This document shows, piece by piece, positions 6,820 through 33,281 of a DNA stretch of 55,418 nucleotides (within the stretch, counting starts at the first letter, position 1; every line of letters starts with the position of its first letter). The notes below the pieces were generated by a model. It was given only the letters and a program-made list of their open reading frames with translations, did no database searches and was not told the DNA's origin. Position numbers and translations under genes: made by a program. The DNA comes from Macrostomum lignano (Eukaryota), in the NCBI GenBank assembly GCA_002269645.1, contig NIVC01004203.1:1-55418 (forward strand), given 5' to 3'.

Positions 6820-7913
6820 ATGGAGATTGTAGTGAAGATTCCCACCGCCATAGAAACTGCCACTGAGGAGCATCGCAATTCGAGGGAGCCCAACTCCGAC
6901 TGCCAAACTCGGTGCAACTGCTTGTTCAAGTGGTTCTTCCTGCCCGGCATTGTCATCATCTACATGTTGCAGTTCGTGCTAGACTGCATTTGCTACACAG
7001 AGATTCTTCCATTCAATTCGACCACCTGTCCCGAAGACCTTTTGCGATATTGCAGCTGCGAGAACGGAAAATGCATTGCCAGCATCAACCACCTGCGCCC
7101 GATCTATGTCTTCTTCCTGGTGATGTCCTCCCTGGTCCTGTTCTGTTTGCTTGTCATCTTTATTATATCCTGCTGCAGCTCCGAGTATCGAGGTGAGCCA
7201 ACTTTCAACTGAGGCAGACAATGTCTCCATGAATTCAATTACGAGCTCACGAGCATCATTGCCAGCATCCTTAAACCCTCTAAGCATGGCATCATTGATA
7301 GAGAAAAAATTAATCAATTTCAGACGTTAATCCAAATTGGACGGGATCGAACACGGAAGCTGCCACCCAAGGTGAGATCTCGTATCTGCCTTCCCTACTA
7401 AGCTCAAACTGAGCTCTATCCCGCTGCTGAACCAAAAAGTCACTGAGTCCAGAGTCAGCAGCTGATAAAGGATCACAGCGCCCTCTAAACGCAGTCCATA
7501 CGTAACCATTCCCCCATCCAGAGATTCCTGGCTACGCGAGAGTCAAATGGATGAGGCTGAACCGCGCAGCCCTGCTGCTCAGTATGCTCATCTCGCTGCT
7601 GCATATCATCCCGCTGAACTCAATCCGAGCTGAGTATCTCGGCACATTCAGAAGGCACCTGCCGCAGGGCAGCCTGGCGAAGCTGGTGCTGCCATCGGTG
7701 AGCAGCATACTGTTCGCCTGCTTCTCCTTCATATTCCGGATTCCGCTCTCCTTCTGTGGCAGCTGCGACCGCTGGGACTGGAGCAGCATTTCAGTGGCGT
7801 CGGTCGCAGCGAGCAGTGCAGACAGGAAAAAACCGTGGCTGGTTGTGCACTACTTCCTGTTCGTGCTGATGCTGGTTGAAATTGTTGTCGCTTTTTTGGC
7901 TCTGCTTCTATGA
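6820..7913 (+). CDS. Orphan multi-pass (~5 TM) membrane protein, copy 1 (divergent; 3 exons, ~270 aa)
   Basis: Exons 6820-7192, 7324-7371 and 7522-7913 joined by phase-1 GT-AG introns (G|gtgagc, tttcag|, G|gtgaga, cccatccag|) give one open frame of 813 nt; homologous to copies 2-5. Confidence 0.7.
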
Positions 7914-8065
7914 GAACTCAGTGTTGATTTCTTATTGAACAGTGCTGTATTGGATCCTTGTTATTGACTTAGAATATGACTGGCAAAATTAACTGCTATA
8001 AACGACAAACTGCTTAACTCATGGTATTTCATTTTCTTGATTTCTCGTCCTTTTGCACCTGTCTT

Positions 8066-8320
8066 TCTCCTCTCCTATCCTCTCCTCTCCTCTCCTCTCC
8101 TCTCCTCTCCTCTCCTCTCCTCTCCTCTCCTCTCCTCTCCTCTCCTCTCCTCTCCTCTCCTCTCCTCTCCTCTCCTCTCCTCTCCTCTCCTCTCCTCTCC
8201 TCTCCTCTCCTCTCCTCTCCTCTCCTCTCCTCTCCTCTCCTCTCCTCTCTCCTCTCCTCTCCTCTCCTCTCCTCTCCTCTCCTCTCCTCTCCTCTCCTCT
8301 CCTCTCCTCTCCTCTCCTCT
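8066..8320. repeat. (TCTCC)n pentanucleotide microsatellite
   Basis: About 50 near-perfect units. Confidence 0.95.
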
Positions 8321-8624
8321 GCGGCAGTTTGATACATCAGAAAACAATTTCTGTGTCCGAGTGTCCCTATTGCAAGAGCATGAAACAGCACTCTGTAAGA
8401 TGCCAACAGCTTTAATAGCATTTTTCCTGTTTTTTTGCAACCCTATGAGTATCTTTCCAGAAATATTTTATCTTCTTGAACGAACTATTTTTAATGAGCG
8501 TACCATATAGAACTAGTTTGATGACTAACTAAAATAATTTTGTCACGGCCTGGCAAACAGTTTTTTTCTAAATTATTTTATTATTTTTGGGCTGACTAAA
8601 TTTGCGAGATGCCACAGTTTGGAT

Positions 8625-9035
8625 GTCAGAAATCATCTAGGTGTCAGAAGCCCCCAGATGTCAGGAGCCCCCAGGTGTCAGGAGCCTCAGGTGTCAGGAG
8701 CCTCAGGTGTCAGGAGCTACAGGATGTCAGGAGCCTCACGTGACCCACAGGTGTCAGGAGCTACAGGATGTCAGGAGCCTCACGTGACCCACAGGTGTCA
8801 GGAGCCCTCAAGTGTCAGGAGCCCCCGTGACAGGAGCCCTAAGTGTCAGGAGCCTCAAGTGTAAGGAGCCCCCAGGTGTCAGGACCTACAGGATGTCAGG
8901 AACCACCAGATGTCAGGAGCGCTTAAGTGTAAGGAGCCCCCAGGTGTCAGGAGACACGCGTGTCAGGAGCCCCCAGGTGTCAGGAGTTCCCCAGGTGTCA
9001 GGAGCCCCCCAGGTGTCAGGAGCACCCAGGTGTCA
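8625..9035. repeat. Degenerate minisatellite (GTGTCAGGAGCCCC core), with a weaker echo at ~9300-9425
   Basis: Repeated tgtcaggagc core. Confidence 0.85.
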
Positions 9036-10003
9036 AGGAGGCTTTTCATATTACCAATTCCAGAATCAGAATCGGTTCGGATCTTCCAAGAAAAACAGCA
9101 GTATAACTATTTAATTCTGTTGAATGTTTGACTGCCTTAACAACCTTACTTAGCACAATTTTTCACTTTATTCTTGGCGATTGTCATTCAATAATAAAAA
9201 CTTTATAGCACGTATCTCCCTAGTTATGGAGACAAAAAGTTATACTTCACACAAATTGGTTCTGGTTCTGGAACCAGAGCAAGCAATATGAAAAGGCCCA
9301 AGAATTCCCCAGGTTTCAGGGATCCTCAGAGCACTCGGGTTTCAGAAGCCCCCAAGTTTCAGGAGCGCCCTACGTGTCAGGAGCCCCCCTCCGGTGTCAA
9401 CACCCCCTTAAGGTGTCAGAAGCGCTAAGCGTCGAATTAGAGCCCAGATACTAAAATATTGGGGCTTAAAAACTGCTTCTTAATGGTAAAATGGCCTTCC
9501 AAGTCCTCAAAGTATTTTTAAGTCCCACATCCAGGGAAAAAGTTTGCCAATGCTCGGAAGACTCGACACGCACACAGCTTGCTTGCATGCACATCGCAGA
9601 TGCTGTGTGCAGCTCGGCATCAATATTGAGCTCACAATAAGCAGTCCGAGTGCCGTACATGGTAGCAATTGCTTCTAAAAGAGCAGTCAGGCAATTTTTT
9701 TCCAAGCCTCTGCAGGTGCCTCTTGGTGTACAATTTAGCTCGTAGTGTGCGATCAGCGCCTCAAGGCTTTGGTTGGGCTTGAAAAAAGATAGTTGCAGAA
9801 AGATTTTCGCGCAAGTGATGCACACAAAGTTCCTTTTTTGCCAGCAAACAGAATGAAACGCCTAAGAATAGCTGCGCCGACTTGCATGCACCGCCCCTAA
9901 GCTCTGTTCTTTATTAGGGAACGGGTTGGGTTATCTAGGAACTAACTGAAAACACCAAGCTTACCAAGCTGCAGTTCAGGTATCAAAAGAAATTCAATTC
10001 ATC

Positions 10004-10891
10004 ATGGAAGTGGCAGCAAAAATGCCTAAAGAAATACAAGATGTTATGAAAGGCGGCAGCAATAAATCCTTTCAAAAACGATTGGGCAGCTGGCTGATCC
10101 TTCCAAGTGCCATGATTTTGTACCTGTCGCAGTTCTTGCTAGATTGCACTGCTGCCTCGGAGCTACAAGCGTTGACCTTTAACACAACGTGTCCTGAGCA
10201 GCTGACGTCTTACTGCTCCTGCACTGGCATAAACTGCACCGCCAATATCATTTATCTATTGCCCCTGTACATTCTGTTTGTAGTGATTGCTGGCATTCTG
10301 CTCATATGCATACTGGTTGTGTTCAGCACCTCCTGCTGCTGTGTGACTACCGCGAGGAAGGTTAGCTGCCTTTTAATTTGAGCTCTGTTACATTTAACTC
10401 TTTTATTACCCTGAAGCATTAAATTTTCAGACGAAAGCAACTCCCGGATCTACGGCGGGAGAATCCCGGCCGCCCCCAGCGAAAGCGACTCTCCGATTAG
10501 CTGCAGAATCCAAGCTGGCGGCAGCGCCCTGCTGCTCAGCCTGCTCATCTCGCTGCTGCACAATATCCCACTGAACGCTCTCCGAGCCCAGTATCTCTAC
10601 GCCTTCAGGAAATTTGTCCCGCTAAGAGGCCTCATCAAGCTGCTGCTACCATCCGCCTGCGCACTTTTGCTCGCCATATTCGCCTTTCTGTTCCGCGTTC
10701 CGTTCTCCTTCTGGGGCTGCTGCAACGATCTCCGCGGCTTCAGCACCACTGGAGTGGTGCGGGATGCCATAGGGAATCCTGGTGACAATGTCCTGCTGTC
10801 GAGGCCGTGGCAAGTCCTGCACTTCTGCCTCATCCTGCTGTCTATCTTTGACTGCCTGTGCGCTCTGCTGCCTCTTGTAATTGGCATCTGA
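10004..10891 (+). pseudogene. Orphan 5-TM family copy 2, frameshifted
   Basis: Exon 1 10004-10360, intron to ttttcag at 10430, exon 2 10431-10891. A 4-nt deletion (GTTC absent versus copies 3 and 5) just before the donor changes the phase from 1 to 0, so exon 2 is read out of frame to an early TGA. Confidence 0.7.
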
Positions 10892-11554
10892 GATGTGGCA
10901 GTTCTCTGAACTCTCGTAGCAAAGTTTATGTACCGTGTTGACAAAAAGACTGATATTCTGCTATTTAATTTCGCACGAAAAGCTTCTGAATTTGTTATAT
11001 TGTAAAATCTGTTTTTAAGCGTGAAAACTTTGTTTTACTATGTTTTACGTTATTGCACTATACGCGAACAAATCGGAAAAAAATTTAAAATAGTATAAAT
11101 ATACTATTTTATAGCTCTTTTGAGCTATAAAATGCCGCTTTAATATGAGTACCGGGAGTACCAGAAGTACGAGAAGTGCCACCAATCTGAGAGCAGACGG
11201 GATTGCTATTGTGGAGTTTCAAAGGACCCAAGAGCCGGATAGGGAGGCTTCACGACCCGTTATGTGTCCCGCGGGCTATGAGTTTACCGACCCTGTAATT
11301 TTATTCCCGAACGTATTTAGCAATTATAGCATTATTGTATTTATGTGCAATACAACAGAGAGTTCAGACTTGGGTAAAGCAATGCGAGACAATTTTTTTT
11401 GTCACACTGAAGCAACTGTGCTTAGCAAATGAAGCCGGGCTCCACCTATTCCTGAATAAATATTGTTTAAGTGCAGTAAGTGAAATAAATAGCTCGTAAA
11501 GCTGAAATTATCGTCTGATTAAACTCAGTGATGTACGGCAGGTCCCAACTGCAA

Positions 11555-14500
11555 TCAGTCTGCCAGGAAGCCGTGACGCAGCAGATCTGCCGTGTCCGCT
11601 CTCGCTGCGGCGTCTCGCTCCACGCACCGGCGGTAGAAGTCCTTCAGACTGCTGGAGGTTCGAGCCGGGAGCTCCGGCATCTCTCTATGACAAATTCGAA
11701 CTGGAATGAGGTGCACGCACACTTCTCCGTTTGGCGGCTTCATCTCCAGCATCTCGAACACTGCGCAGCCGAACGCCCAGACGTCAGTCTTTGGCGAGTA
11801 GGTGATTCGGCCGTCGTCCCTGAACAGCTCGGGAGCCATGTAGTACCAGGTGCCTCCCAGGTGATCGGTGCTCACCTCCATGAATGTTGAGACGATCTGC
11901 TTTGCCAGGCCGAAGTCGATGAGTTTGACAACGCCTTCGTGAGTGAGCATTATGTTCGAACACTTGATGTCCCGATGAACGACTGGCCTTGTCCAATTGT
12001 GCAGGAAGTTGAGAGCGGTGCACACCTGGAATTCCGCCCAGATATTTGAAGTTCTGACCTGAGTTCTGAGGGGTCCGCGGCCTAGTGGTCTAGCGTGGCG
12101 CTCTGATGTGCCAGCGGCCCAGGCTCGATTCCAAGCGCAGTCACATTAATTTTATGCTAAATTGGAATCTTCGCTTGGCTCTGCTCGTGCAATCAACGTC
12201 CCTGAAGGCCAACCCCCAAGGCACAGTGAAGTGTACATGCCTAAAGTTAGGGCCGCTGTACACTCCTGTGTGAGTGTGTGCCTGTGCGTATGACTGCGTA
12301 CATATCCTTGCGCTTGTGTGCCTGCTCAGGGGAGTCGGTGGAATGAGCAGTAATGCCTCTCGCCGGTTGTGACAATGTCGCTTAAAGTGCGCCAGGCTGC
12401 ACACAGCCTCTAATAAAACATAATCTGAATCAAACATGGGATTTACCTGCACCGAGATCTTCTTTACTGCCTCTTCATCGAAAGGCCTGCCCTGGAGGTT
12501 CATCAGGTCCAGGAGGCTGTGGCCGGCAATCAGCTCGGTGAAGATGCAGAACTGGCCGGTGCTGGAGCGCTCGTACTTGAGAAATTGCATTATGTTCAGG
12601 TGTCAAATGCCTTTCAGAATCTCAATGCCCAGCCTCTCGCGTTCAATTGCCTTTGCAAGCTTTGCGGGGTCCTTGGTGTCATTGAGCTTGACAATCTTGA
12701 CGGCCACCGTCTGAAGCTTGTCAGTCAGCACCTTGTACACCTTGCCGAAGCCGCCCCTTCCGATTGGGTGCTTCTTGCCACCGTCTAGAATAAATTTCCA
12801 GCTAGTAAAGCTTGGATCCAGTTCCGGTGGGCACCTAAAATAGCGAAACTTGATGTTTTTTAGTTTGGAAGTAACGTACGCTCGTAGAATGGTTAAAATT
12901 GAAGCATGTTCAAATTTGTTCTCAGACGTACGAAGACTCTGATGACGTTCTATTTGAGAGCGAAGGCGGCTGCTCCGAGCCTTGGCGTCCCGAATGCGTG
13001 GCCAAACGCTCCATCTGAGAGCTTCTTCGTCCCGGTTGTGAGGTAGAAGCTGCTGAAGCTCCAGAAACCGGCGAGACGGCTGTACCTGAGCTGTCATCGC
13101 GTCGATTTTTACTCACTTGAACAACGCTGGCCGCGCTCTGCATGGGGGAGGCGGAATCGGAGTACGTGCTGATTGGCAGCTTCGAATCCAATCCGCTCTG
13201 CATGGGGGAGGCGGAATCGGAGTACGTGCTGATTGGCAGCTTCGAATCCAATCCGCTCTGCATGGGGGAGGCGGAATCGGAGTACGTGCTGATTGGCAGC
13301 TTCGAATCCAATCCGCTCTGCATGGGGGAGGCGGAATCGGAGTACGTGCTGATTGGCAGCTTCGAATCCAATCCGCTCTGCATGGGGGAGGCGGAATCGG
13401 AGTACGTGCTGATTGGCAGCTTCGAATCCAATCCGCTCTGCATGGGGGAGGCGGAATCGGAGTACGTGCTGATTGGCAGCTTCGAATCCAATCCCAGCGA
13501 CGGTTCCTGTCCTGGAAATTGATTCTGCGTCTGCGTCATCCAGCTGAGCACCTGGCTACTCCTGCTGTTCCTTCTAGCGTAGTTGGACGCCGAGTTTCCC
13601 TCGCTGTCAGGAAGCTGAAAAGCCGATGGGCCAAGCGAGTTTTTAATGCGATTCAACGATTCCACACTTTGGTGTTGAGCGGCCAGGTGAGCTAGTGTTC
13701 GGCCACGCGAGTCGCTGGCGACCAGGCAGTGCGGGCCCAAGTTGCTGATGCACCAGGCGAGAGCGGAGTCGCTCACTGTATTCTGCGCAGCCAGGTGCAC
13801 CACCGTCCACCCGCTGTTGTTCTTGGCTGAGAAAGCCTCGGTGCCGACCTGGTCAGCGAGGAACTGCAGCGAGTCCGCCCTCTGGTAGAGCGCAGCCAGG
13901 TGAAGCGGCGTGCTGCCCTGGCCGTCCTTCAGAGTCAGGCAGCCGCTGCCGCATTCACCGACCAGCCACTTAAGACTCGAGTTGTCCTGTTTGTTCATGG
14001 CGGCGCAGTGGATGGCAGTTCGCTGGCATCGACCTTGGAAATAGAAGACAGAAGGACCGACCAGCGACTTGATGAGCTCCATGGACCGGTAGTCCCTCTT
14101 CATGGCGGCCTGGTGCACGGGAGTGTCTTCGTAGTCGTCCTGAACGGCGAGACAGTCGCGCCCGCACGTTCTGATCAGCCAGTCAAAGACCGCACCCGTC
14201 CGTACGTTCGAGGCGGCCGCGTGCACAGCTGTCCGGCCGAACTGGCCGGGCTGGTTGAAGCAGTCTCTGCCGGCAGCAGTGAGAATCATGGGCAGCCAGG
14301 TCTCATCCTGGACCAGCGCGACCAGGTGCACCGGCATCTGGTTGTACTGGTTCCTGCAGGTGAGACAACTCGGTCCGAACCGGTGGATCAGGATCTCCAG
14401 GCAGTGCGGACTGTTGGTCCTGCATGCGATGTGGTGCACCAGGGTCTGCTCCACTCTGCCTTCACGATATCCGCCAACAGTCAGGGTGATGTTGGAGCCG

Positions 14501-14571
14501 ACTTCGCAGCACAGGAACAGCAGTCGCTCGCTGTCTCCGGTCTCCAGAGCCGCTATTAAGTTGGCCTCCAT
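11555..14571 (-). CDS. Ankyrin-repeat + STE/MAP3K-like Ser/Thr kinase (3 exons, ~832 codons) with one in-frame TGA; possibly a pseudogene
   Basis: Exons 14571-12932, 12834-12447 and 12025-11555 with in-phase GT-AG junctions; ~8-9 ankyrin motifs (e.g. GSTPLHLAA, GRTAVHAAA); kinase motifs GRGGFG, VAVK, HRDIKCSN, DFG, GTWYYMAPE, DVWAFG; TGA at 12605-12603 in ILKGI*HLNIMQF. Confidence 0.85.
12071..12420 (+). mobile_element. tRNA-derived SINE, copy 2, in kinase intron 2
   Basis: Head GCGGCCTAGTGGT...GGCGCTCT...GCGGCCCAGGCTCGATTCC resembles tRNA-Glu with A and B boxes; body matches 3487-3849; AATAAA near the 3' end. Confidence 0.75.
13135..13494 (-). repeat. Coding 60-bp tandem repeat x6 (GLDSKLPISTYSDSASPMQS) in the ankyrin-kinase linker
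   Basis: Six essentially identical 60-nt units, in frame. Confidence 0.95.
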
Positions 14572-15523
14572 CGAGTCTCAATGTAGAGTTTCGACAAGAA
14601 AAAAATATGTGAGTTGTGAGCTGAGCTGCTTTTTTAAAAATGCTTTGAGCTAAACACCGGTGTTTATTTGTATAGTTTAAGGCTAGTTGAGCTATTTCTG
14701 GCCGTAACGCTTAACATCTGCCTCCGAAGTTGGCATGTGCATCTTGGTGGGCAATTTAGCTCGTAGTGTGCATTCAACGTCTCTGCGCGTATGAGCTTTC
14801 GGCAGGGCTGGTAGGATGCATTAATAAGGAGCTAATTAATTTCAACTCTTGCCATTGTGCCTGGCAAAATGGGCAGGCAAATAGAATTTTGCATAGCCAA
14901 CCAGCGGGTTTTACAGCCGTGTGTCGGAACAAATCGACTGACTTGCAGCATCTGACACCCAGCCGCAACGGAAAAAACTGCCGTGCGCAACTGAGGCTTA
15001 AGCGGTGCCTTATAGTCAGTGCAGCTTATTAAATCAAAGAGCAAAACCCCTTTGGCACAGGCTATTCCTACTGTCTAAATGCACAACACTTAGCTCGTAC
15101 TTTATCTCGAATCGTTGAATACTGATAAAACTATAATTTACTTGGACAGATAATTTCTGGATAACTTGCACATTTTAGATCGTATACATGTATAATACAA
15201 TCCTAGTCACCAGATAAAGAAAACCAGTGAAATTTCTTGGAAAAAGACAGTCGCAGAAAGACTTGCGCGCAAAACATGCACGCTTAGTTCAATGCTTGCC
15301 AGCTGTACACAGTTGATGCCGGCTTCAACTCCGGAAATCGGCGGTTGACAGAGAAACCAAACGCAATACCTAAAAATAGCTGTACGGAGGCCGGACATAC
15401 ATGACTTAAGCTCTATAATTTATAATGGGAACGGGTTGGATTACCTAGAAACTAACTGATAACTCTTTAGTGAATTTGTTAAACCGCAGTTCAGGTATCA
15501 CTGAAATAGAAATTCAATTCATC

Positions 15524-16420
15524 ATGGAAGTGGCAGCCAAAATACCTGAAGCAATCGAAACTGCTGTTGAAGATGGCAACGGTGAATCCTTTCAGAAACG
15601 ATTGGGCAGCTGGCTGATCCTTCCAGGTGTCATGATTTTGTACCTGTCGCAGTTCTTGCTAGATTGCACCGCTGCCTCGGAGCTACAGACGTTGACCTTT
15701 AACGTAACGTGTCCTGAGCAGCTGACATCTCACTGCTCCTGCTCTGACAGAGAGTGCACCGCCAACATCAGCCATCTGAAACCGCTGTACATTGTGTTTG
15801 TTGTGGTTGCTGGCATTCTGCTCCTAGGCGTACTGATTGTGTTCAGCACCTCCTGCTGCTGTGTGACTACCGTTCGCGAGGAAGGTTAGCTGCCTTTAAT
15901 TTGAACTTTGTTACATTGAATTCTTCTATTACCCTGAAGCAGTAAATTTGCAGACAAAAGCGACTTACGGATCAGCAACAGGAGAGTCCAGCCCGGCCGC
16001 AGACGAAAGCGACTCAAGGATCAACAGCTAAAGAGAAACCGGGCTGGCCGCAGCGCCCTGCTGCTCAGCCTGCTCATCTCGCTGCTGCACACTGTCCCGC
16101 TGAACGCTCTGCGAGCTCAGTATCTCTACGCCTTCAAGAAATTTATCCCACTAAGAGGCCTCATCAAGCTGCTGCTACCATCCGCCTGCGCACTTTTGCT
16201 CGCCATATTCGCCTTCCTGTTCCGCGTTCCGTTCTCCTTTTGGGGCCGTTGCAGCGACCTCAGCGACTTCAGCACCGCTGGAGTGGTGCGGGCTGCAATC
16301 GGGAATCCTGATGACAATGTCCTGCTGTCGAGGCCGTGGCGCGTCCTGCACTTCTGCCTCATCCTGCTGTCCATTATTGACTGCCTGTGCGCTCTGCTGC
16401 CTCTTGTAATTGGCATCTGA
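15524..16420 (+). CDS. Orphan 5-TM family copy 3 (2 exons, 275 aa)
   Basis: Exon 1 15524-15884 (GAAG|gttagc, phase 1), 69-nt intron, exon 2 15954-16420 (tttgcag|AC); translation is open through SALLLSLLISLLH...LPLVIGI*. Confidence 0.8.
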
Positions 16421-17690: not shown

Positions 17691-17821
17691 CAGCTTGACA
17701 GTTGAAGTTGCTGGCTCCGTGGACACTGCAAAACCCCATCAGCTTTAAACTGTGCCTTATAGTCAGTCTGCCTTTTTAAATTATTGAGCAAATGGCAGCT
17801 TCTACTGGCAGCAGCACGACA

Positions 17822-18107
17822 TTTGTCCCACTAGGAAGCCTTATCAAGCTGCTGCTACCATCCGCCTGCGCACTTTTGCTCGCCATATTCGCCTTCCTGT
17901 TCCGCGTTCCGTTCTCCTTCTGGGGCTGCTGCACCGAGCTCCGCAGCTTCAGCACCGCTGGAGTTGTGCTCGATGCCATCGGGAATCCTGATGACGCCGG
18001 TGTCCTCTGGACGAGGCCGTGGCAAGTCCTGCACTTCTGTCTCATTCTGCTATCCATCCATCATTGACTGCCTGTGCGCTCTGCTGGCTCTTCTAATTGG
18101 CATCTGA
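17822..18107 (+). pseudogene. Orphan 5-TM family copy 4: 3' fragment of exon 2
   Basis: Matches exon 2 from FVPL..IKLLLPSAC to GI*; exon 1 is absent; a 4-nt duplication (tccatccatc) shifts the frame. Confidence 0.8.
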
Positions 18108-18393
18108 GCTGTGGCATTTTTCTGAACTTTTTGGCAAATATTATTTAGCAATAATAAGCAATATTCAGATTTAGCATCTCAAACTTAGCTTTTAAATCTC
18201 GGTGAATGTCAGTGTTCTGCTAAATATGCATAATGCGTGCTCTAAGTTCATCTGGTATACATTAGTATCCGTCCTATGATAGTGCTCGGACGGAATCCCG
18301 ACCTAAATCCCTAATCCTCGACTGTTCTTGACTAGTCGTGACAACAGTTAACAGATATAAAAGTACTTCTGCAAAGTGGCAAGCACATCCAAT

Positions 18394-19193: not shown

Positions 19194-19299
19194 AAATGAA
19201 TCAAATAAACTTTTAAACTAAATGAAAATACTCGTAACCAGGAGCTCTGCATTTTACGTTTGTGTCTTTTGAGCTACAAAATGGCGCTTTAACAGTAGG

Positions 19300-25100: not shown

Positions 25101-26166
25101 CACGGACGGTTTGACCGGTGTACGTACTGAGCTGAACCGTTGACGCAGACAGAGACATCCGGCTTCCCAGGTTTTCCTTGAACGTACGTTCGGACATCAG
25201 CGATACGGATGCCCCCGTGTCCACCTCCATCTCGAATCGCTTCTCCTCGATGAAGACAGAGGTCACGATTGGAGGAAACCTGGCCTGCGATCGGTCAGCA
25301 CCCAGATGGTAGAAGGGATAAGCGACCTCGGCTGGGCTGGGCGGCTCGGCGGCCTGAGCTGAGCTGCTGTCTGAAGGCTGCTGGTCAACCAGCTGGTGCA
25401 TTTGCATGTGCTGTGTCCCCGCCTTGCATGCCTTCGCGGTGTGCCCGGTTTTGCTGCAGTTGAAACAGCGTTTGTCCGCGAAGGGACATTTGGCTGCCGG
25501 ATGGCGAGTCGACAAGCAGCGGAAACAGCGCCGCCGGCCTTCTGTTCCAGACTGACGGCTGTCTTGCGGTCGCTGTCGTTCCATTCGAAGCACGGAGTCG
25601 CTCTCTGTCGCTGACGATGCCGATGTCACTGCCGCAGGTTTTGCTGAGCCCAGCGATTGACAGTTTTTGGCTGCTGACTCGCCCGCTTGCGCGATCTGTT
25701 TGGCAGTTACGAGGGTCAGCTCGGCCTCCATCAGGAGCCGGCGCTGGATTTGTTGGTCCGCGATGCCGCACACCAGCCTGTCGCGCAGCATGTCAGACAG
25801 GCTGCCGCCGTAATTGCAGAACTCCGCCAGCTTCCGCAGCTCCGCAAGGAACTCTGCCACCGACTCTCCAGGGCGCTGAACTCGGTTATTGAAGTGGAAC
25901 CTCTGAATGATCTTACTCGGCCTTGGGTTGAAATGAGCGCTCAGCAGCTCGCGTATTTCGGCATAGGATTTGTCCGCGACTTTGGCTGGAGAGCAGAGGC
26001 TTCTGGCCAACTGGAAGGTTTTCCTACCGCAGACGCTCAGCAGGGTGGCCCTCTTTTTACTTTCGTCGGTGATGTCCTGTGCCAGGAAATGTTGCTCCAG
26101 ACGCTCCTGGTACTCATCCCAGGTTTCCTCGGAGTCCTCATATTCTCCGATTGCGTGGTTAGGCAT
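22181..26166 (-). pseudogene. gag-pol of the Gypsy element (2 CCHC knuckles, protease, RT, RNase H, integrase), disrupted
   Basis: CFRC..H...C and CFNC..GH....C; VDTGAS; WASPIV..ADF; LPFG..FIDD; HHCC LHVGH..C..C; DFAGP; PYHPASNGQAER. In-frame TGA at 24597-24595; deletion plus frameshift near 22985 removes the second integrase Asp region. Confidence 0.92.
22277..22385. repeat. (GGC)n-rich microsatellite giving a poly-Pro tract in the integrase C-terminus
   Basis: ggcggcggcgttggcggcggcg.. translates to PPPTPPPT on the minus strand. Confidence 0.85.
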
Positions 26167-26178
26167 TGCTCAGCCACA

Positions 26179-26191
26179 ATCCTCGTCGCCA
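26179..26191 (-). other. Primer-binding site complementary to tRNA-Ser(GCU)
   Basis: TGGCGACGAGGAT, one nt after the 5' LTR; complementary to the conserved eukaryotic tRNA-Ser(GCU) 3' end AUCCUCGUCGCCA. Confidence 0.8.
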
Positions 26192-27132
26192 CTAAAACAA
26201 CTCTATAGTGGTTAGTGCGAGAAATCAAAAGTATTGAGCTCTGAGCTCACTAGACTACTTTTATATTTTGGTAAAAAGCGAACGTAAGAATGATTGATGC
26301 ATAAAAGCACAAGGGTTTTAAAAGAACGCACACACTAGTCACGCTCAATGAAGCATTGTCAGTCAATCGATAAAATAAAACAGCGAGTGTACTCAATGTA
26401 CACCCGCTGAGTCACGCGATACGACATTTAGAATCTAAGAAATCGTCTTAGAAGTCAGAACATCTACCAAAGGGTAAGAACATCCGCACCCGGGGATCTG
26501 AAAACTCGCCTAAGGGCAGAAAACCTACCAGAGTGAAAGCCGTGACCCTCTGATCCCGGTAACGCCTCAGGACTGAGAGAGAAAACCTCAATAGGCGAGT
26601 TGTAATACATAGGATAGGATAAAAGTACAGTGTCCTAAGACCGCTCAGGCTAGTAGTATATAATACGCTACCGACTTTATATGAGACGTTACCAGTTCAG
26701 CAGTAAGCTAAATTTAGAAGAAACTAGCAATCAGCGCCCCCCCGTTGGGGAGCCAAAAAATGCAGTACAAGTTTTTTTAATAAACTACATGTAAGCGTCT
26801 CTTTGCATTATACCTCAGCAACCCCTTGTAAGCCTTAACATGTCAGCAATCCCCCCACAAGCCTTAGCATACTCCCCCCTTGAAATCTCAGCTATTCCCC
26901 CCGTAAGCCTTGACATGTTAGCGATGCCCCCCCATAAACCATCTGAAAAATCCCCTGTTAACCTTGAAACCCGCTAAAATCTAACCCTCAACCCAAAACT
27001 AACCTAAACCTAACTTTAACCCAACCTAAAGCCTTGAAATCTCGGCAATTCTTCTCCCCTAAGCCTTGATATTTTAGTGATTCCTTCTTTAAGCATCACA
27101 GCACTATAGCGATTCCCTCCAACCCTTGACAT

Positions 27133-28817
27133 TGTAGCGTACTTTAATGACTTTCCCGAAATTTCTTCAGATTTCTAAAAGTCAAAAACTATTTCCAGAA
27201 ACTTCTTTGAGTTAGCAGCTAATCTATAACATACGCATATAAATAGTAAATAATTAATTATCACTTAAGTATTAATGTTCTAGTTATATTTACGTAATGT
27301 ATATAATTAAAGAGTTATTTCGCTTTGTTAAAATTAGCTGAATCTTTCTAGAAATTTCCGGAAGGCAATAACAAAGCTATAAATACACGGCGGCAGCAGT
27401 GAAACAAATCACTCTCTCACTCTCCCCTTGTTTTCTCTTTGATCAAAGTTACGTTGGTAAATAACTAAATGAACCACCGCCTTGCTCTTATTCAATAATC
27501 AAATTAAAGAAAATTCTACAATGGTCCGGTGAGGCGTCGAGCGATCTCTTTCAGAATGCGTGTGCATACGCACGCCCGTGACCGCTCATCATGCCATCAT
27601 TCGCGATCAGCACCGCCGTCGCTACCAACGCCAAAACATAGCACACCACTGTCTACTGCCCAGCGTCATCACTTCTCAGCGTGTCTCCCGTCGCCGTCAT
27701 GTAATATAAATTTAGCTAAACCGTCGCCAACCTCCCTGTTCCCACATCTAAAAACGACACGGTATCTCGTCGGTGACCAAATAAACTACGCCTACACGGG
27801 CTCACGAACGGCCATCCGATCGAGCCATCCGCGCAGCTACATGTATGACCTCCACGTATACGTACCAGCGACATCAACCGCAGCACCGCGCAGACGCGAC
27901 GTTAGCACTGGGTCTCATCCGTCGCGAAAAAACTCAATTAGCAATCCACAATAAACCGGCTGGCACTACCGGCGAGTCTACACATTGCAACCTTCTACGA
28001 GGTTCCTCGATAAGCCGGTGGTCAACCAGCTGGCCTAACCCGAACAACACCCATGAATCTTCTCGGTTCTGTTTCAGCCGCAGAGCGACTACCCGCCTTG
28101 ATCCCTGGCGCCTATCCGTAGTTCGGGAGTCGTCTGTCTGCAAACCGGCAATAACCTGCAGGTCGTTCAAACTACAGCGACAAACCGCCATCCTGGAACA
28201 GTGCCGCAGAGACCACGGACTTGTTAACCGCCATAATGTACAATCAGTCTGAACTCCTCGACCGCAGTGCGAGCCCAGCTGCCCCTATCCGTCTCGCGGT
28301 GAACCCAGTCGTCATCTGTATTAATTTTCAGCAGCGTAATTTCAACCTGGACTTTATTCACGGTAACCCAGCAACTAATTAACATTAATTAACCGTCATA
28401 CCTTAGGGACTCCGTCTCCCGTGGGGGGAACTGTTGTAGCGTACTTTAATGACTTTCCCGAAATTTCTTCAGATTTCTAAAAGTCAAAAACTATTTCCAG
28501 AAACTTCTTTGAGTTAGCAGCTAATCTATAACATACGCATATAAATAGTAAATAATTAATTATCACTTAAGTATTAATGTTCTAATTATATTTACGTAAT
28601 GTATATAATTAAAGAGTTATTTCGCTTTGTTAAAATTAGCTGAATCTTTCTAGAAATTTCCGGAAGGCAATAACAAAGCTATAAATACACGGCGGCAGCA
28701 GTGAAACAAATCACTCACTCTCCCCTTGTTTTCTCTTTGATCTAAGTTACGTTGGTAAATAACTAAATGAACCACCGCCTTGCTCTTATTCAATAATCAA
28801 TTAAAGAAAATTCTACA
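27133..28817 (+). mobile_element. Non-autonomous LTR retroelement (TRIM/LARD-like)
   Basis: LTRs 27133-27520 and 28435-28817 (TGTAG...CTACA, about 4 differences); 4-bp TSD ACAT (27129-27132, 28818-28821); PBS-like TGGTCCG at 27522; PPT GGGGGGAA before the 3' LTR; ~0.9-kb interior with no retroelement protein motifs. Confidence 0.9.
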
Positions 28818-29149
28818 ACATCGTAGCAATTCCCAAATGAATTTTTTAACTTCGACATGACTCTTCTTTTATGTATACATAGTGCTACTTTTCTTTTTTA
28901 CATGACTCTTCTTCTATCAGCCCCCCCCCGTTACGAGCCAACAAAGAATGTAATAAAAAAATTGAGCAAACTACATGTACTATGAAGTAGCTTCTGACGT
29001 TTGCTTTGACATCTCAGAAACCCTCCCCCCGTAATCTCAGTTATTCTCCGTAAGCCTTGACATCTCAGTAATTCTCCCCAGCACAGCACAAAAGCTTCAT
29101 TTACTTTTTACATGGCACTTCTTTTATGTCTGACAGGACGCTTATTTTG

Positions 29150-30325
29150 ATTTTTACATGACGCTTCTACGAGCTATAATTTCTCAAATGACACTTTCAT
29201 TAGTTTTTACATGACGCTTCTATGATTTTTTACATGACGCTTCTATGATTTTTTACATGACGCTTCTGTTGTACGTGTGGTTGTCCTGCTGTACAGCGCA
29301 GTGACTTGGGCTCCGTCCTCTCACTTAGAAGCCTTCTTAACTTTAGTAGCGTAGGTAGTGCTGCCACCAGTTCCTTCAGGTCTCGGCCTTCGGTGAGGTG
29401 AGCTTCCCGTCGGAACGAAATAATGAAGTCAACGAACACAGCACAGCGTGCAGATTTAGAGCGCAACGAATAGGGCGTCTCGTCAGCAGTACCTGCCGGG
29501 CTAGGATGGTAGAGGGAGGGCTGAGTTAGCCTCTCGTAGACTTGGGTTGACTTGGTCAGGTTTCAGTCGGAGCAATAGGAATAGAATCAATATGCGCAAA
29601 GGCTCGGACACTCGGGATTTAGTCACGTGCAGACGTAGAACTCGAGGTTGAACAGAAAGAAGACTCCTTGACGGAAACAAGGCGGAGAGGGCTCCTATTT
29701 ATAGCCGGGAAACGCCCGCGCTCAAGACCTCGTGACTCGTTCTATTTTTAGAACTGACGTCACTCGAGAGTCTTGGGCAGGGTACAAGCGTGCGGAAGGC
29801 CTCGTGATTGTTCTATTTTTAGAACTGACGTCACTTGAGGTCCCCGGCCAGAGTACACGCGGCTGTGACTCAGTTGCTATTTTTAGCAACATGAGTCACT
29901 CCTCTCCTTAGAGAAGGGAGGGGTCCGAAAGCACGTGACTCACCCGGTAAACAGGGCCAACGGGTGCAGTAAACATGCTTACTGCACTTTAAGACTCAAA
30001 GAACGCAAGAACTGTCATGTGACTTGCTCACAAGACAGTGAAAACGGGACGGGGGCGAAACAGAGACAGCTCACAGCCGAGAGGCTGGGGGCTGAGAACA
30101 GAGACGCAACAGAGCGACAAAAGGGCGGGCGACAACAGGCAGACAAAAGGGGGGCGGGAAGCTGACCAGCGGCAGCGGCGAGGGCGAGGGAACAGCTGAC
30201 AAGGGCGACGCCTAACCATTAACTAGCGGCTCACTACACTTCTATGATTTTTTATATGACGCTTCAATGATTTTTTACATGACGCTTCTGTGATTTTTTA
30301 CATGACGCTTCTATGATTTTTCACA
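29150..30325. repeat. 23-bp satellite (ATGACGCTTCTATGATTTTTTAC) split by a solo LTR
   Basis: Units at ~29150-29266 and 30239-30325. Confidence 0.8.
29267..30238 (-). mobile_element. Solo LTR (972 bp)
   Basis: TGTTG...CTACA ends; 4-bp TSD CTTC (29263-29266, 30239-30242); minus-strand TATAAATA at ~29696-29703, preceded by three ~35-bp repeats (gtgact..ctatttttag.aactgacgtcact). Confidence 0.8.
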
Positions 30326-30855
30326 TTTTAGGATTTAAAGAGAGAAATGAACACCTAGCTACCACGGCTTGGTGACTCAACGGTGGGATTATTCTGACAG
30401 AGAACTAACACCACCAACACAACTTGGTGACAGCATTATAGTATTAGATTTATTTGAGCATTGTGATAAAACACTAATTTAGTAGGACGGATAATTTCTC
30501 GATAAACCGGTATTATATACATTTATAATGCAACCCCAGCTATTAGTTGGTGAAGACTAGTGAAATTTCTTGGAAAAGGATAGTCGCAGAAAGATTTGCG
30601 CACAACTGCTGCACACACGCAGTTCCATGTTTTCCTGCTGTACGCAGATGATGCCCCGGTTCAACTCCGAAAATCGGCGGTTGACGGAGAAACCAAACGC
30701 AATGACTGAAAATAGCAGTACAGACATGCATGCCCTGTAGCTCTGCAGTTTATAACAGAACAGTTCGGATTATCTAGGAACTGACTGAAAACTCGTCAGT
30801 GAATTTAATAAACTACATTTTAGGTATCTTTGCAATAGAATTCAAATAATTAATC

Positions 30856-32577
30856 ATGGAAGTGGCCGCCAAAATACCTGAAGCAATCGATGCTGCCATT
30901 GAAGGCCGCAACGCTGAATCCTTTCAAAAACGATTGGGCAGCTGGCTGATCCTTCCAGGTGTCATGATTTTGTACCTGTCGCAGTTCGTGCTAGATTGCA
31001 CCGCTGCCTCGGAGCTACAGACGTTGACCTTTAACGTAACGTGTCCTGAGCAGCTGACATCTCACTGCTCCTGCTCTGACAGAGACTGCACCGCAGCCAT
31101 CAGCCATCTGCAACCGCTGTACATTCTGTTTGTAGTGATTGCAGGCATTCTGCTCATAGGCGTACTGATTGTGTTCAGCACCTCCTGCTGCTGTGTGACT
31201 ACCGTTCGCGAGGAAGGTTAGCTGCCTTTAATTTGAACTTTGTTACATTGAATTCTTTTACTACTCTGAAGAATTAAATTTTCAGACGAAAGAGACTCTC
31301 CGATCGACGGCGAGGAAATCCGGCCCGGCCCCAGGGAAAGAGACTCTTGGATCGACGGCGGGGGAATCCGGCCCGGCCCCAGGGAAAGAGACTCTCGGAT
31401 CGACGGCGGGGGAATCCGGCCCGGCCCCAGGGAAAGAGACTCTTGGATCGACGGCGGGGGAATCCGGCCCGGCAACAGGGAAAGAGACTCTCGGATCGAC
31501 GGCGAATGGCCCGGCCCCAGGGAAAGAGACTCTTGGATCGACGGCGGGGGAATCCGGCCCGGCAACAGGGAAAGAGACTCTCGGATCGACGGCGGACGGC
31601 CCGGCCCCAGGGAAAGAGACTCTTGGATCGACGGCGGGGGAATCCGGCCCGGCAACAGGGAAAGAGACTCTTGGATCGACGGCGGGGGAATCCGGCCCGG
31701 CCCCAGGGAAAGAGACTCTCGGATCGACGGCGGACGGCCCGGCCCCAGGGAAAGAGATTCTCGGATTGACGGCGGAGGAATCCGGCCCGGCCCCAGGGAA
31801 AGAGACTCTCGGATCGACGGCGGACGGCCCGGCCCCAGGGAAAGAGACTCTCGGATCGACGGCGGAGGAATCCGGCACGGCCCCAGCGAAAGCGACTCTC
31901 GGATCGACGGCGGACGGCCCGGCCCCAGGGAAAGCGACTCTCGGATTGACGGCGGAGGAATCCGGCCCGGCCCCAGCGAAAGAGACTCTCGGATCGACGG
32001 CGGACGGCCCGGCCCCAGGGAAAGCGACTCTCGGATCGACGGCGGAGGAATCCGGCACGGCCCCAGCGAAAGCGACTCTCGGATCGACGGCGAGGAAATC
32101 CGGCCCGGCCCCAGAGAAAGCGACTCTCGGATCGACGGCGAGGAAATCCGGCCCGGCCCCAGAGAAAGCGACTCTCCGATCAACAGCAGGGGAATCCGGG
32201 CCTGTCGCAGCGCCCTGCTGCTCAGCCTGCTCATCTCGCTGCTGCACACTGTCCCGCTGAACGCTCTTCGAGCTCAGTATCTCCATGCCTTCAGGAAATT
32301 TATCCCACTAAGAGGCCTCATCAAGCTGCTGCTACCACCCGTCTGCGCACTTTTGCTCGCCATATTCGCCTTTCTGTTCCGCGTTCCGTTCTCCTTCTGG
32401 GGCCGCTGCAGCGACCTCCGCGGCTTCAGCACCGCTGGAGTGGTGCGGGATGCCATAGGGAATCCTGGTGATAATGTCCTGCTGTCGAGGCCGTGGCGAG
32501 TCCTGCACTTCTGTCTGATCCTGCTGTCCATCATTGACTGTCTGTGCGCTCTGCTGGCTCTTCTACTTGGCATCTGA
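30856..32577 (+). CDS. Orphan 5-TM family copy 5 (2 exons, 550 aa) with a repeat-expanded loop
   Basis: Exon 1 30856-31216 (phase 1), exon 2 31286-32577; the frame is preserved across 20 repeat units into SALLLSLL..LLGI*. Confidence 0.78.
31288..32190 (+). repeat. Coding minisatellite, 48/42-bp units x20 (RERDSRIDGGGIRPGP / RERDSRIDGGRPGP)
   Basis: Unit starts are separated by 13 intervals of 48 nt and 6 of 42 nt (876 nt in total). Confidence 0.92.
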
Positions 32578-33188: not shown

Positions 33189-33209
33189 ATACTACTACTA
33201 CTACTACTG

Positions 33210-33280
<71 letters not shown>

Positions 33281-33281
33281 G

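What the first reader, a model, noticed from the sequence alone, without database searches (positions are those of the whole stretch)
6820..32577. Tandem family of an unrecognised ~5-TM membrane protein hidden by splicing
Seen: five related loci (6820, 10004, 15524, ~17822, 30856). The ORF track splits each into two short ORFs, but a conserved phase-1 intron joins them. Layout: TM1; a Cys-rich loop with a conserved N-glycosylation sequon (NST/NTT/NVT); TM2 followed by CC/CCC; a charged variable loop; three more hydrophobic segments. I recognise no family. Inference: birth-and-death evolution (intact, frameshifted, fragmentary and expanded copies) fits a lineage-specific receptor, channel or recognition family.
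Basis: partly seen in the sequence, partly recalled or inferred. Interest (0 to 1): 0.7.

Follow-up and report, generated by a model that had tools for sequence, protein, structure and literature searches.

The report
Orphan flatworm membrane-protein gene cluster
The window is a Macrostomum lignano (flatworm) contig carrying five tandem copies of a real, spliced gene for a small multi-pass membrane glycoprotein that has no detectable relatives outside this species; it is a genuine but fairly ordinary lineage-restricted gene family of unknown function.

Summary
Five related loci lie on the + strand at 6820, 10004, 15524, 17815 and 30856. A conserved 69-70-nt GT-AG phase-1 intron joins two ORFs into a ~275-aa protein. 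The protein has five hydrophobic segments, a Cys-rich loop with a conserved N-glycosylation sequon, and CC/CCC after TM2.

The window is a whole contig of the M. lignano assembly GCA_002269645.1. Copy C is already annotated there with exactly this splice (PAA48212.1, "hypothetical protein"), and that annotation was built from RNA-seq.

State of each copy:
- A is intact and strongly constrained (8 synonymous to 1 nonsynonymous change between homeologs).
- B carries a 4-nt frameshifting deletion; its homeolog is intact.
- C is intact.
- D is a 3' remnant.
- E is intact, not broken. Its 0.9-kb "expansion" is an in-frame 48/42-nt minisatellite of about 20 units in the TM2-H3 loop.

Pfam, PDB sequences, a profile search of 5.8 billion proteins and an exhaustive HMMER search of 1.84 billion cluster representatives found only M. 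lignano proteins. AlphaFold models were poor (pLDDT 45-52) and Foldseek gave nothing significant.

dN/dS on the Cys loop is 0.43, so there is no sign of diversifying selection. The "receptor/channel/recognition" reading remains untested. This is a real orphan family of modest interest.

The parts
6820..7192 (+). Copy A, exon 1. Encodes the N-terminal helix, TM1, a Cys-rich loop with 6 Cys and sequon NST, TM2 and CC. Ends at a phase-1 donor G|GTGAGC.
   Evidence: It is 43% identical to copy C. It is 99-100% identical in homeologs L001 and L002, with 8 synonymous to 1 nonsynonymous change.
7324..7371 (+). Copy A, possible 48-nt micro-exon (phase 1 in, phase 1 out). It may instead be intronic.
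   Evidence: AG/GT borders are present and the frame is kept with or without it. It lies in a locally repeated element that is expanded in L002. This is unresolved without RNA-seq.
7522..7913 (+). Copy A, last exon. Encodes the end of the loop, H3, H4, loop 4 and H5, up to the stop codon.
   Evidence: It is 100% identical at protein level in L001 and L002.
10004..10360 (+). Copy B, exon 1. It is 357 nt. A 4-nt deletion just before the donor puts the donor in phase 0, which shifts the frame relative to exon 2.
   Evidence: The collinear homeolog L002_B (98.7% identical region) has the intact 361-nt exon.
10431..10891 (+). Copy B, exon 2. The ORF is intact in the phase-1 frame. The loop holds 2 repeat units.
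15524..15884 (+). Copy C, exon 1 (361 nt, phase 1).
   Evidence: It matches the annotated protein P0004/PAA48212.1.
15954..16420 (+). Copy C, exon 2, giving a 275-aa protein. Part of its loop is read in a shifted frame relative to B and E (a +1/+5 compensated frameshift turns ESDS... into RKRLK...).
17815..18129 (+). Copy D, a 3' remnant (H4, loop 4 and part of H5). It has a premature stop and a frame shift near its end, and it lacks exon 1, the intron, the loop and H3.
   Evidence: Homeolog L001 keeps a longer D that is also degenerate: a 75-nt deletion in the Cys loop and the same premature end.
30856..31216 (+). Copy E, exon 1 (361 nt, phase 1).
   Evidence: It is identical to the N-terminal part of UniProt model P0002.
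31286..32577 (+). Copy E, exon 2. It is an uninterrupted ORF, and the whole protein is 550 aa.
31288..32199 (+). In-frame minisatellite inside copy E exon 2. It has 19 full units plus one degenerate unit of 48 or 42 nt, encoding ERDSRIDGGGIRPGPR or ERDSRIDGGRPGPR. These form the loop between TM2 and H3.
   Evidence: TRF finds period 48, 19.7 copies and 86% matches. The translation is in frame. The same unit occurs 1-7 times in the other copies. The long ORFs on the minus strand and in other frames here are stop-free repeat artefacts.

Best explanation
**What it is.** A lineage-restricted (so far Macrostomum lignano-only) family of small integral membrane glycoproteins. The genes have two exons and sit in a tandem array.

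**Inferred protein layout (inference, not shown experimentally):**
- A conserved acidic N-terminal helix in the cytosol.
- TM1.
- A ~40-residue extracytoplasmic mini-domain that is disulfide-bonded and N-glycosylated.
- A very hydrophobic TM2.
- A juxtamembrane CC/CCC, a typical S-acylation context.
- A disordered cytosolic linker whose sequence and length are almost free.
- A conserved C-terminal membrane module of three hydrophobic helices. H3 carries the family's best-conserved motif, ALLLSxLISLLHxxPLN.

**Most likely function (inferred).** Non-enzymatic: a membrane scaffold or accessory subunit whose conserved polar residues in the membrane (Y40, Q43, D47, H166, N171, K192, H253) mediate helix packing or oligomerisation.

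**How the array evolves (shown).**
- Tandem duplication and conversion of a ~1.0-1.3-kb unit.
- Slippage or unequal exchange of a 48-nt coding minisatellite in the linker (1 to ~20 units).
- Loss of copies by small deletions (B) and truncation (D).
For: **The genes are real.**
- The ORF is kept in 10 of 11 full-length copies examined across three homeologous contigs.
- Exon indels are multiples of 3, intron indels are 1 nt, and the loop is always 2 mod 3 although its length ranges from 95 to 926 nt.
- dN/dS is 0.04 for A between homeologs (binomial P = 6e-5) and 0.4-0.6 among B-E paralogs (P = 0.0009 to 0.04).
- Copy C's splice is identical to a GenBank model. The GenBank annotation came from StringTie/TACO RNA-seq assemblies (PMC5730564).

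**Layout.**
- Five hydropathy peaks.
- Invariant cysteines, an invariant sequon N60-x-T, CC after TM2 and the H3 motif.
- Both AF2 models agree on helices for TM1, TM2, H3, H4 and H5, small beta strands in the Cys loop and a coil linker.

**The linker is unconstrained.**
- Copy number is 1, 2, 7 or ~20 units.
- Copy C carries a compensated frameshift there.

**Orphan status.**
- Pfam: none at E<=10.
- Word-indexed searches of 5.8e9 proteins: only 3 M. lignano clusters, even at E<=10 with a profile.
- Exhaustive hmmsearch of 1.84e9 representatives: 1 hit, M. lignano.
- The PDB sequence search and both Foldseek searches gave nothing significant.

**Array dynamics.**
- Exon and intron identity among paralogs is 0.89-0.91, against 0.60-0.70 in the flanks.
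- The gene at the B position of homeolog L001 is only ~85% identical to window B, inside a 97-98% identical background. A 16-kb segment carrying E and an LTR retrotransposon is absent from L001.
Against: - No experiment or expression dataset for these genes was found.
- RNA-seq reads could be multi-mapped among near-identical copies. Transcription is therefore supported for the C type only, and only indirectly.
- The B-E clade's dN/dS of 0.4-0.6 is only mildly below 1. The C and B homeolog comparisons are not significantly different from neutral.
- The topology is not settled. H3 is flanked by basic residues on both sides. Cysteine parity fits better if loop 4 is on the same side as the Cys loop, which would give 4 spans plus one non-spanning helix.
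- 'Scaffold or accessory subunit' is an inference from the absence of enzyme or channel signatures, not from positive evidence.
- Orphan status depends on which flatworm data the libraries hold. Other Macrostomum genomes and transcriptomes may not be represented.
Confidence: 0.6

Rival explanations
1. It is a very divergent member of the claudin/PMP22/calcium-channel-gamma (tetraspan) fold. That fold has four true spans, an extracellular beta-sheet built from the large first loop plus the loop before the last helix, and a role as a junction, adhesion or channel-auxiliary protein. H3 would then be a membrane-peripheral helix in the cytosolic loop.
For: - Claudin-9 is the top Foldseek hit of model 2 (6ov3_A, E 0.62, prob 0.47, TM 0.28/0.36). 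Claudin-4 and stargazin recur in both searches.
- AF2 places short beta strands in the Cys loop.
- The extracytoplasmic cysteine count becomes even in most copies if loop 4 faces the same side as loop 1 (sequences).
- Basic residues lie on both sides of H3.
Against: - All structural hits are non-significant and come from models of pLDDT 45-52.
- No Pfam PMP22_Claudin or Claudin_2 hit appears even at E<=10.
- The defining W-(G/N)LW...C...C motif is absent; there is no Trp at all in loop 1.
- The intracellular loop is long and there is no C-terminal tail.
- H3 is hydrophobic enough to span the membrane (KD 1.9).
Confidence: 0.1
2. One reading: a lineage-specific receptor or recognition family whose extracellular loop diversifies under positive selection, as in self/non-self or gamete recognition genes.
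For: - Tandem array with gain and loss of copies.
- A glycosylated Cys-rich ectodomain.
- One gene position (B) differs by 15% between otherwise 97-98% identical homeologous regions.
Against: - dN/dS of the Cys loop is 0.43. No region exceeds 1, apart from TM1, where there are 0 synonymous changes and the ratio is undefined.
- There are only about five genes per haplotype, and no other cluster exists in the protein libraries.
- The most variable part is the cytosolic linker, not the ectodomain.
- Copy A is almost invariant.
Confidence: 0.1
3. It is an oligomeric channel built like the large-pore channels (connexin/innexin/CALHM type): a conserved N-terminal helix, a Cys-bonded first extracellular loop and a variable cytosolic loop. 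This would be by analogy, not descent.
For: - The N-terminal 16 residues are strongly conserved between A and C and are predicted helical.
- Polar and charged residues in or at the hydrophobic segments are conserved: Q43, D47, H166, N171, K192, H253.
- A variable loop follows TM2.
Against: - No Pfam innexin, connexin or CALHM hit, and none among the Foldseek results.
- The Cys spacing differs from those families.
- There is a fifth hydrophobic segment.
- There is no functional data.
Confidence: 0.07
4. The loci are not functional genes: decaying ORFs of a locally amplified repeat or transposon passenger, and the annotation reflects spurious transcription.
For: - B and D are defective.
- The intron is as conserved as the exons among B-E paralogs (0.886 vs 0.905), which shows recent copying rather than long selection.
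- The homeolog comparisons for B and C are not significantly below neutral.
- The region is rich in minisatellites and retrotransposons.
Against: - A and C are 43% identical with saturated dS (~1.4), yet keep the frame, all loop cysteines, the sequon and the H3 motif.
- A has 8 synonymous to 1 nonsynonymous difference (P = 6e-5).
- The reading frame is kept through about 20 repeat units in E.
- No transposon protein domains are in or next to the unit.
- Copies occur only at this locus and its homeologs.
Confidence: 0.05

Closest known systems
Claudin / PMP22 / EMP / voltage-gated Ca-channel gamma (stargazin) tetraspan superfamily
   Same: - Small size of about 250 aa.
- A large first extracellular loop with disulfide(s) and predicted beta strands.
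- Several tightly packed TM helices.
- Best, though non-significant, Foldseek neighbours.
   Different: - No Pfam match.
- No W-GLW-C-C motif.
- Five rather than four hydrophobic segments.
- A long hypervariable cytosolic loop.
- No cytoplasmic tail or PDZ-binding end.
Tetraspanins
   Same: - A multi-pass small membrane glycoprotein.
- Juxtamembrane cysteine clusters of the kind that are palmitoylated.
- Often expanded in flatworms and arranged in tandem.
   Different: - The large Cys-rich loop lies between TM1 and TM2 here, not between TM3 and TM4.
- No CCG motif.
- No PF00335 hit.
Large-pore channel architecture (innexin / connexin / CALHM)
   Same: A conserved N-terminal helix, a Cys-containing extracellular loop after TM1, and a variable cytosolic loop after TM2.
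   Different: - No sequence or fold match.
- Different Cys spacing.
- An extra hydrophobic segment.
- Much shorter than innexins.
FAM155A/NALF1 (NALCN auxiliary subunit)
   Same: It is the only PDB sequence hit below E = 0.01 (E 0.005). Both have cysteines next to a TM, followed by a charged stretch and a Leu-rich helix.
   Different: The per-domain independent E-values are 2 and 60. The alignment covers only the low-complexity linker and a Leu-rich helix, not the FAM155 Cys-rich domain. I treat it as compositional.
Taxonomically restricted ('orphan') gene families of M. lignano
   Same: - No homologue outside the species in very large libraries.
- Annotated only as a hypothetical or 'transmembrane' protein.
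- In the published M. lignano transcriptome only a minority of genes have a human homologue (8,006) or a Pfam domain (5,819), out of 44,328 non-redundant genes (Table 3 of PMC5730564).
   Different: Nothing separates it from that class, apart from the coding minisatellite in the linker and the clear membrane architecture.

Membership tests
Claudin/PMP22 superfamily | Match to Pfam PMP22_Claudin (PF00822), Claudin_2 (PF13903) or related models | tested here: not met
   hmmscan of copy C against Pfam-A at E<=10 gave 0 families.
Claudin/PMP22 superfamily | W-(G/N)-L-W ... C ... C signature in the first extracellular loop | tested here: not met
   Loop 1 of every copy (alignment) contains no Trp and no GLW.
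Claudin/PMP22 superfamily | Four-helix bundle with an extracellular five-stranded sheet (the fold) | tested here: inconclusive
   The AF2 models have pLDDT 45 and 52. The best Foldseek hit is claudin-9 at E 0.62 and TM 0.28/0.36, which is not significant.
Tetraspanin | PF00335 match, and a large loop between TM3 and TM4 with a CCG motif | tested here: not met
   No Pfam hit. The only Cys triplet is CCC/CC directly after TM2, and the big Cys loop lies between TM1 and TM2.
Innexin / connexin / CALHM channels | Pfam match and the family-specific Cys spacing in both extracellular loops | tested here: not met
   No Pfam hit. The loop-1 pattern is C-x14-C-x7-C-x-C-x4-C, and loop 4 has 1-3 Cys. None of these families appears in the Foldseek lists.
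FAM155/NALF | Significant alignment that includes the extracellular Cys-rich domain | tested here: not met
   The whole-sequence E is 0.005, but the per-domain i-E is 2 and 60. The aligned region is linker plus H3 only.
TMEM273 (the name UniRef gives to the truncated model P0005) | Detectable sequence similarity to vertebrate TMEM273 | not tested
   The label was seen only. No vertebrate protein appeared in any search, which argues against it. No direct comparison was made.
Rhodopsin-like GPCR (neighbouring genes at 35955-37715 and 40302-41516) | 7tm_1 match, or significant similarity to the neighbouring GPCR paralogues | tested here: not met
   There is no Pfam hit for the family. BLASTP against the GPCR gave E >= 0.46. 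Smith-Waterman against shuffles gave p = 0.007 to 0.33, limited to 'A(G)xALLLSLL'.
Lineage-restricted tandem gene family (birth-and-death) | Several paralogues in tandem, a mix of intact and defective copies, and no homologue outside the lineage | tested here: met
   There are five copies in 26 kb: A, C and E intact, B frameshifted, D truncated. Only M. lignano hits were found.

The most novel reading that the evidence does not exclude
The family founds a structurally new class of small five-segment membrane proteins. In this reading the conserved N-terminal helix, the disulfide-knotted glycosylated mini-ectodomain and the His/Asn/Asp-bearing helices form an oligomeric pore or an obligatory accessory subunit, possibly for the rhodopsin-like GPCR paralogues 3-8 kb downstream. 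The minisatellite-encoded cytosolic linker would act as a length-tunable tether that differs between paralogues and alleles.
Probability: 0.1. Interest if true: 0.6.

Novelty: new member of a known kind. Interest (0 to 1): 0.3.

Why it matters
If the family is functional, it adds one more uncharacterised membrane-protein fold candidate in a regeneration model that can be manipulated genetically (transgenesis and RNAi exist for M. lignano).

Three points have some practical value:
1. Copy A is the most constrained member. No protein model of it, nor of the full-length 550-aa copy E, is in the public protein collection searched here (shorter E-like models P0002 and P0003 are), so current gene sets under-report the family.
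2. The coding minisatellite ranges from 1 to about 20 units and tolerates a compensated frameshift. It is a clean natural example of an almost unconstrained disordered linker inside a constrained membrane protein.
3. The three homeologous contigs show gene conversion, copy loss and a 16-kb presence/absence segment. This is relevant to how the recently duplicated M. lignano genome is diverging.

None of this changes a current view in the field. Orphan genes are very common in this species.

Tried and rejected
- **Pfam** on copy C at E<=10: nothing.
- **Copy A as a single query** against the 5.8e9-protein index: nothing. It did not even find the C-type proteins, which shows the word-index limit. 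The exhaustive profile search covered this gap and found only M. lignano. The profile search at E<=10 added nothing.
- **PDB sequence profile search**: FAM155A at E 0.005. Rejected after reading the alignment, which is a low-complexity linker plus a Leu helix with per-domain i-E of 2 or more.
- **Two AlphaFold2 runs** on shallow alignments: pLDDT 45.3 and 51.8. The two Foldseek PDB searches gave a best E of 0.78 and 0.62. These are unusable except as a weak claudin-like lead.
- **Expression or phenotype data**: the gene ids Mlig015542 and Mlig025620 are absent from full texts and from the held supplements of four M. lignano papers. A fifth paper had no supplements held.
- **Derivation of H3 from TM4 of the neighbouring GPCRs**: prompted by a 32-nt blastn hit at 36510-36541. 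Rejected as chance or codon bias.
- **tRNA-derived SINE in the copy-A intron**: my impression on reading the sequence. ARAGORN and Rfam found nothing.
- **Rescue of window copy B by an alternative donor or acceptor**: none keeps the frame (by inspection of the sequence).
- **Exact-sequence look-up** of A (254 and 270 aa), E (550 aa) and the GPCR control: none is in the collection. Absence of A and E there is therefore uninformative about expression.

Full report
**Origin of the window**

The spliced protein of the 15524 locus is 96% identical to [quoted passage not shown]. A member of the same 90% cluster, PAA48212.1 (BOX15_Mlig015542g3, "partial"), lies on a contig of exactly 55,418 bp. Its sequence equals my splice of copy C plus 21 residues of upstream open frame. 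The window is therefore a complete contig of the M. lignano Mlig_3_7 assembly (GCA_002269645.1). Two further contigs of that assembly, NIVC01000934.1 (L001) and NIVC01000292.1 (L002), carry the same region at about 97-99% identity. This fits the known recent genome duplication of this species (PMC5730564; abstract of PMC10468722).

**The observation**

blastn of the 15400-16700 region against the window finds copies at 9898-10912 (85%), 17815-18129 (85%, 3' part only), 30739-31382 plus 32117-32599 (87-89%), and a weaker 70% match at 7569-7785. tblastn with the spliced proteins finds the same five loci (E from 5e-27 to 3e-179) and no others in the window.

Gene models:

| Copy | Exons | Product or state |
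|---|---|---|
| A | 6820-7192 / (7324-7371?) / 7522-7913 | 254 or 270 aa |
| B | 10004-10360 / 10431-10891 | frameshifted |
| C | 15524-15884 / 15954-16420 | 275 aa |
| D | 17815-18129 | 3' remnant |
| E | 30856-31216 / 31286-32577 | 550 aa |

**Is the intron real?**

- In the eight B-E-type copies on the three contigs, the donor G|GTTAGC and the acceptor CAG|AC are at the same position, and the intron is 69 or 70 nt.
- The intron has stop codons in all three frames, and its only indels are 1 nt.
- Indels inside the exons are 75, 3 and 36 nt. The single exception is a 4-nt deletion in window copy B.
- The variable loop at the start of exon 2 ranges from 95 to 926 nt, yet is 2 mod 3 in all eight copies. 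This is exactly what a phase-1 exon needs.
- The GenBank model of copy C uses the same junction. That annotation was derived from RNA-seq through StringTie/TACO, not ab initio.

"Hidden by splicing" is true only for a bacterial-style ORF list.

**State of each copy**

- **A** is intact. It is 43% identical to C.
- **B** in the window has lost 4 nt (ACC----GCGAGGAAG versus ACCGTTCGCGAAGAAG) just before the donor, so exon 1 is 357 nt and out of phase. No nearby alternative GT or AG restores the frame. The collinear copy on L002 has the intact 361-nt exon. This is either a recent null allele or an assembly error.
- **C** is intact on all three contigs.
- **D** is a 3' remnant in the window and on L002. 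L001 keeps a longer D, but that copy has a 75-nt deletion removing half of the Cys loop and the same premature stop (…LLSIHH*). D was therefore already decaying before about 1 kb was lost.
- **E** is intact. The long ORFs in other frames and on the minus strand over 31218-32286 are stop-free repeat artefacts.
- The UniProt models P0002 and P0003 are the same E-type protein with two units and one unit. This could be allelic variation, assembly collapse, or a predictor that spliced out the repeats.

**Protein anatomy**

Hydropathy gives five peaks of at least 1.6 in both A and C, at residues 31-49, 88-106, 155-173, 190-208 and 255-273 of C. Features invariant between the A and C types:
- The N-terminus ME(V/I)xxKIPxAIExA.
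- P34, Y40, Q43 and D47 in or at TM1.
- Loop cysteines C48, C63, C71, C73 and C78, and the sequon N60-x-T62 within "FN(x)TCPE".
- C111-C112 directly after TM2.
- "ALLLSxLISLLHxxPLNxxRAxYL" (H3), the best conserved stretch at 74% identity between A and C.
- K192, P196, R211, P213, G218 and C220.
- P248, W249 and H253.

Both AlphaFold runs give helices for the five segments, short strands in the Cys loop and coil for the linker, but with pLDDT of only 45 and 52.

Topology is not settled.
- The simple reading is five spans, N-terminus in and C-terminus out.
- Against that, H3 has basic residues on both sides.
- The B-E proteins have five cysteines in loop 1 and one to three in loop 4. The extracytoplasmic total becomes even in most copies only if loop 4 is on the same side as loop 1. 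That would give four spans with H3 or H4 not crossing.
- This is inference from the sequences.

**The linker**

The loop between TM2 and H3 is built from the 48-nt unit in every paralogue: one unit (P0003), two (B, C, P0002), seven (the B-position gene of L001, whose units have diverged to SKSDPATDGGGAQAGP) and about twenty (E). Within a gene the units are homogenised.

Relative to B, copy C carries a +1 and a +5 insertion 25 nt apart. The stretch between them is read in another frame, so the acidic ESDSPISC becomes the basic RKRLKDQQLK. A segment that tolerates twenty-fold length change and a frame change is almost certainly a disordered spacer.

**Selection** (Nei-Gojobori counts on exon 1 plus the H3-to-end part)

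| Comparison | Result |
|---|---|
| A, window vs L001 | 8 synonymous, 1 nonsynonymous; dN/dS 0.04; binomial P = 6e-5 |
| B-E paralogues | dN/dS 0.39-0.62; C-E P = 0.006; E vs L001_B P = 0.0009; C-B and B-E P = 0.03-0.04 |
| C and B homeolog pairs | 0.54 and 0.45, not significant |
| A vs C | dS saturated (~1.4), dN 0.47 |

By region within the B-E clade, the Cys loop is 0.43, H3 0.42, H4 0.39, H5 0.29, the N-terminus 0.79 and TM2 0.81. No region with synonymous changes exceeds 1. There is no signal of diversifying selection on the ectodomain.

Among paralogues, exons (0.905), intron (0.886) and exon 2 (0.906) are about equally similar, while the 150-nt flanks drop to 0.70 and 0.60. This points to recent duplication or gene conversion of a roughly 1.0-1.3-kb unit.

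**Homeolog comparison**

- The gene at the B position of L001 is only ~85% identical to window B, although its surroundings are 97-98% identical.
- The 16.3-kb stretch 19504-35822 of the window, with an LTR retrotransposon and copy E, has no counterpart in L001.
- L002 shares the retrotransposon.

The array is therefore being remodelled by conversion, insertion or deletion, and copy loss.

**What family is it?**

- Pfam-A: no hit at E<=10.
- Word-indexed search of 5.8 billion proteins: three clusters, all M. lignano, with a single sequence and with the A+C profile at E<=10.
- Exhaustive hmmsearch of the profile against 1.84 billion 50%-cluster representatives: one hit, M. lignano P0002.
- PDB sequences: FAM155A at E 0.005. 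The per-domain independent E-values are 2 and 60, and the alignment covers the charged linker and a Leu-rich helix only, so I reject it.
- Foldseek against the PDB with both models: best E 0.78 and 0.62. Claudin-9, claudin-4 and stargazin recur at TM 0.2-0.36. This is a lead only, and the claudin sequence signature is absent.
- UniRef calls the truncated model P0005 "Transmembrane protein 273". No vertebrate protein appeared in any search, so I regard this as an automatic label.

By every test available here the family is an orphan. Orphan status is common in this species. The published transcriptome reports Pfam domains or human homologues for only a minority of its 44,328 non-redundant genes (Table 3 of PMC5730564).

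**Most likely explanation**

Shown:
- The genes are real and spliced.
- They form a small tandem family with intact and defective members.
- They encode a multi-pass membrane protein with a conserved Cys-rich, sequon-bearing loop, a Cys cluster after TM2, a minisatellite-encoded free linker and a conserved C-terminal helical module.
- There are no relatives outside M. lignano in the libraries searched.

Inferred:
- Loop 1 is extracytoplasmic, disulfide-bonded and glycosylated.
- CC/CCC is S-acylated.
- The linker is cytosolic and disordered.
- The protein acts non-enzymatically as a membrane scaffold or accessory subunit, through helix packing or oligomerisation.

I put about 0.6 on this package as a whole. 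The structural and evolutionary part is much more secure than the functional part. Rivals are a claudin-like tetraspan (0.1), a recognition family (0.1), a pore (0.07) and non-functional ORFs (0.05).

**Verdict**

The finding is real and carefully observed, and its evolutionary reading is largely right. Its functional speculation is unsupported. Part of it (copy C) is already in GenBank as a hypothetical protein. It is a new, uncharacterised member of the well-known class of lineage-restricted membrane-protein gene families. Interest 0.3.

Noticed in passing
window 11555-14571 (- strand): A multi-exon gene sits between copies B and C. It encodes ankyrin repeats (Ank_2, E 5e-25) followed by a protein kinase domain (Pkinase, E 3e-31). 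It contains a perfect 60-nt x 6 in-frame tandem repeat at 13134-13494 (100% matches) encoding GLDSKLPISTYSDSASPMQS.
   Followed up: partly
window 22052-26166 (- strand): An LTR-retrotransposon-like element has gag, aspartyl protease, RT, RNase H and integrase domains in three adjoining ORFs. It is present in homeolog L002 at 98.6% identity. It is absent from L001, together with the whole 19504-35822 segment that also carries copy E.
   Followed up: partly
window 35955-37715 and 40302-41516 (+ strand): Two paralogous single-ORF rhodopsin-like GPCR genes (7tm_1, E 1e-10 and 3e-9) lie 3-8 kb downstream of copy E. The first has a 39-nt x 13 tandem repeat (37101-37614) in frame in its C-terminal tail. 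This is another coding minisatellite in a membrane-protein gene.
   Followed up: partly
window 36510-36541 vs 16055-16086: A 32-nt stretch, 90.6% identical, is shared between H3 of the family (…AGRSALLLSLL…) and TM4 of the GPCR (…AGGALLLSLL…). BLASTP finds nothing, and shuffling gives p = 0.007-0.33. It is most likely codon-biased Leu-rich chance similarity.
   Followed up: yes
window 7193-7521; L001 699-1089; L002 1169-2442: The intron region of copy A contains a ~60-nt unit (…CCACCCAAGGTGGGATCTCGTATCTGCCTTCCCTA…CTGAGCTCTATCCCGCTG) that is single in the window, duplicated in L001 and expanded to about 1 kb in L002. To my eye it looked tRNA/SINE-like on the minus strand, but ARAGORN and Rfam found nothing.
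   Followed up: yes
window 53329-55274 (- strand): A fragment of a second retroelement runs to the contig end. It has an integrase zinc-binding domain, an integrase core and DUF5641.
   Followed up: partly
window 8066-8320, 8639-9040, 17154-17647, 33186-34340, 38458-38964, 39559-39976, 41598-42315, 44398-44927: The density of micro- and minisatellites is unusually high (periods 3-48 nt, 25-50 copies each). They produce many long spurious ORFs in all frames. The 10-nt array at 17154-17647 lies directly upstream of the truncated copy D.
   Followed up: no
protein P0005 (UniRef100_A0A1I8I1Q1): An N-terminally truncated model of the C-type protein is named 'Transmembrane protein 273' in UniRef. 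None of my searches returned any vertebrate TMEM273-like protein, so the name looks like an automatic mislabel.
   Followed up: partly
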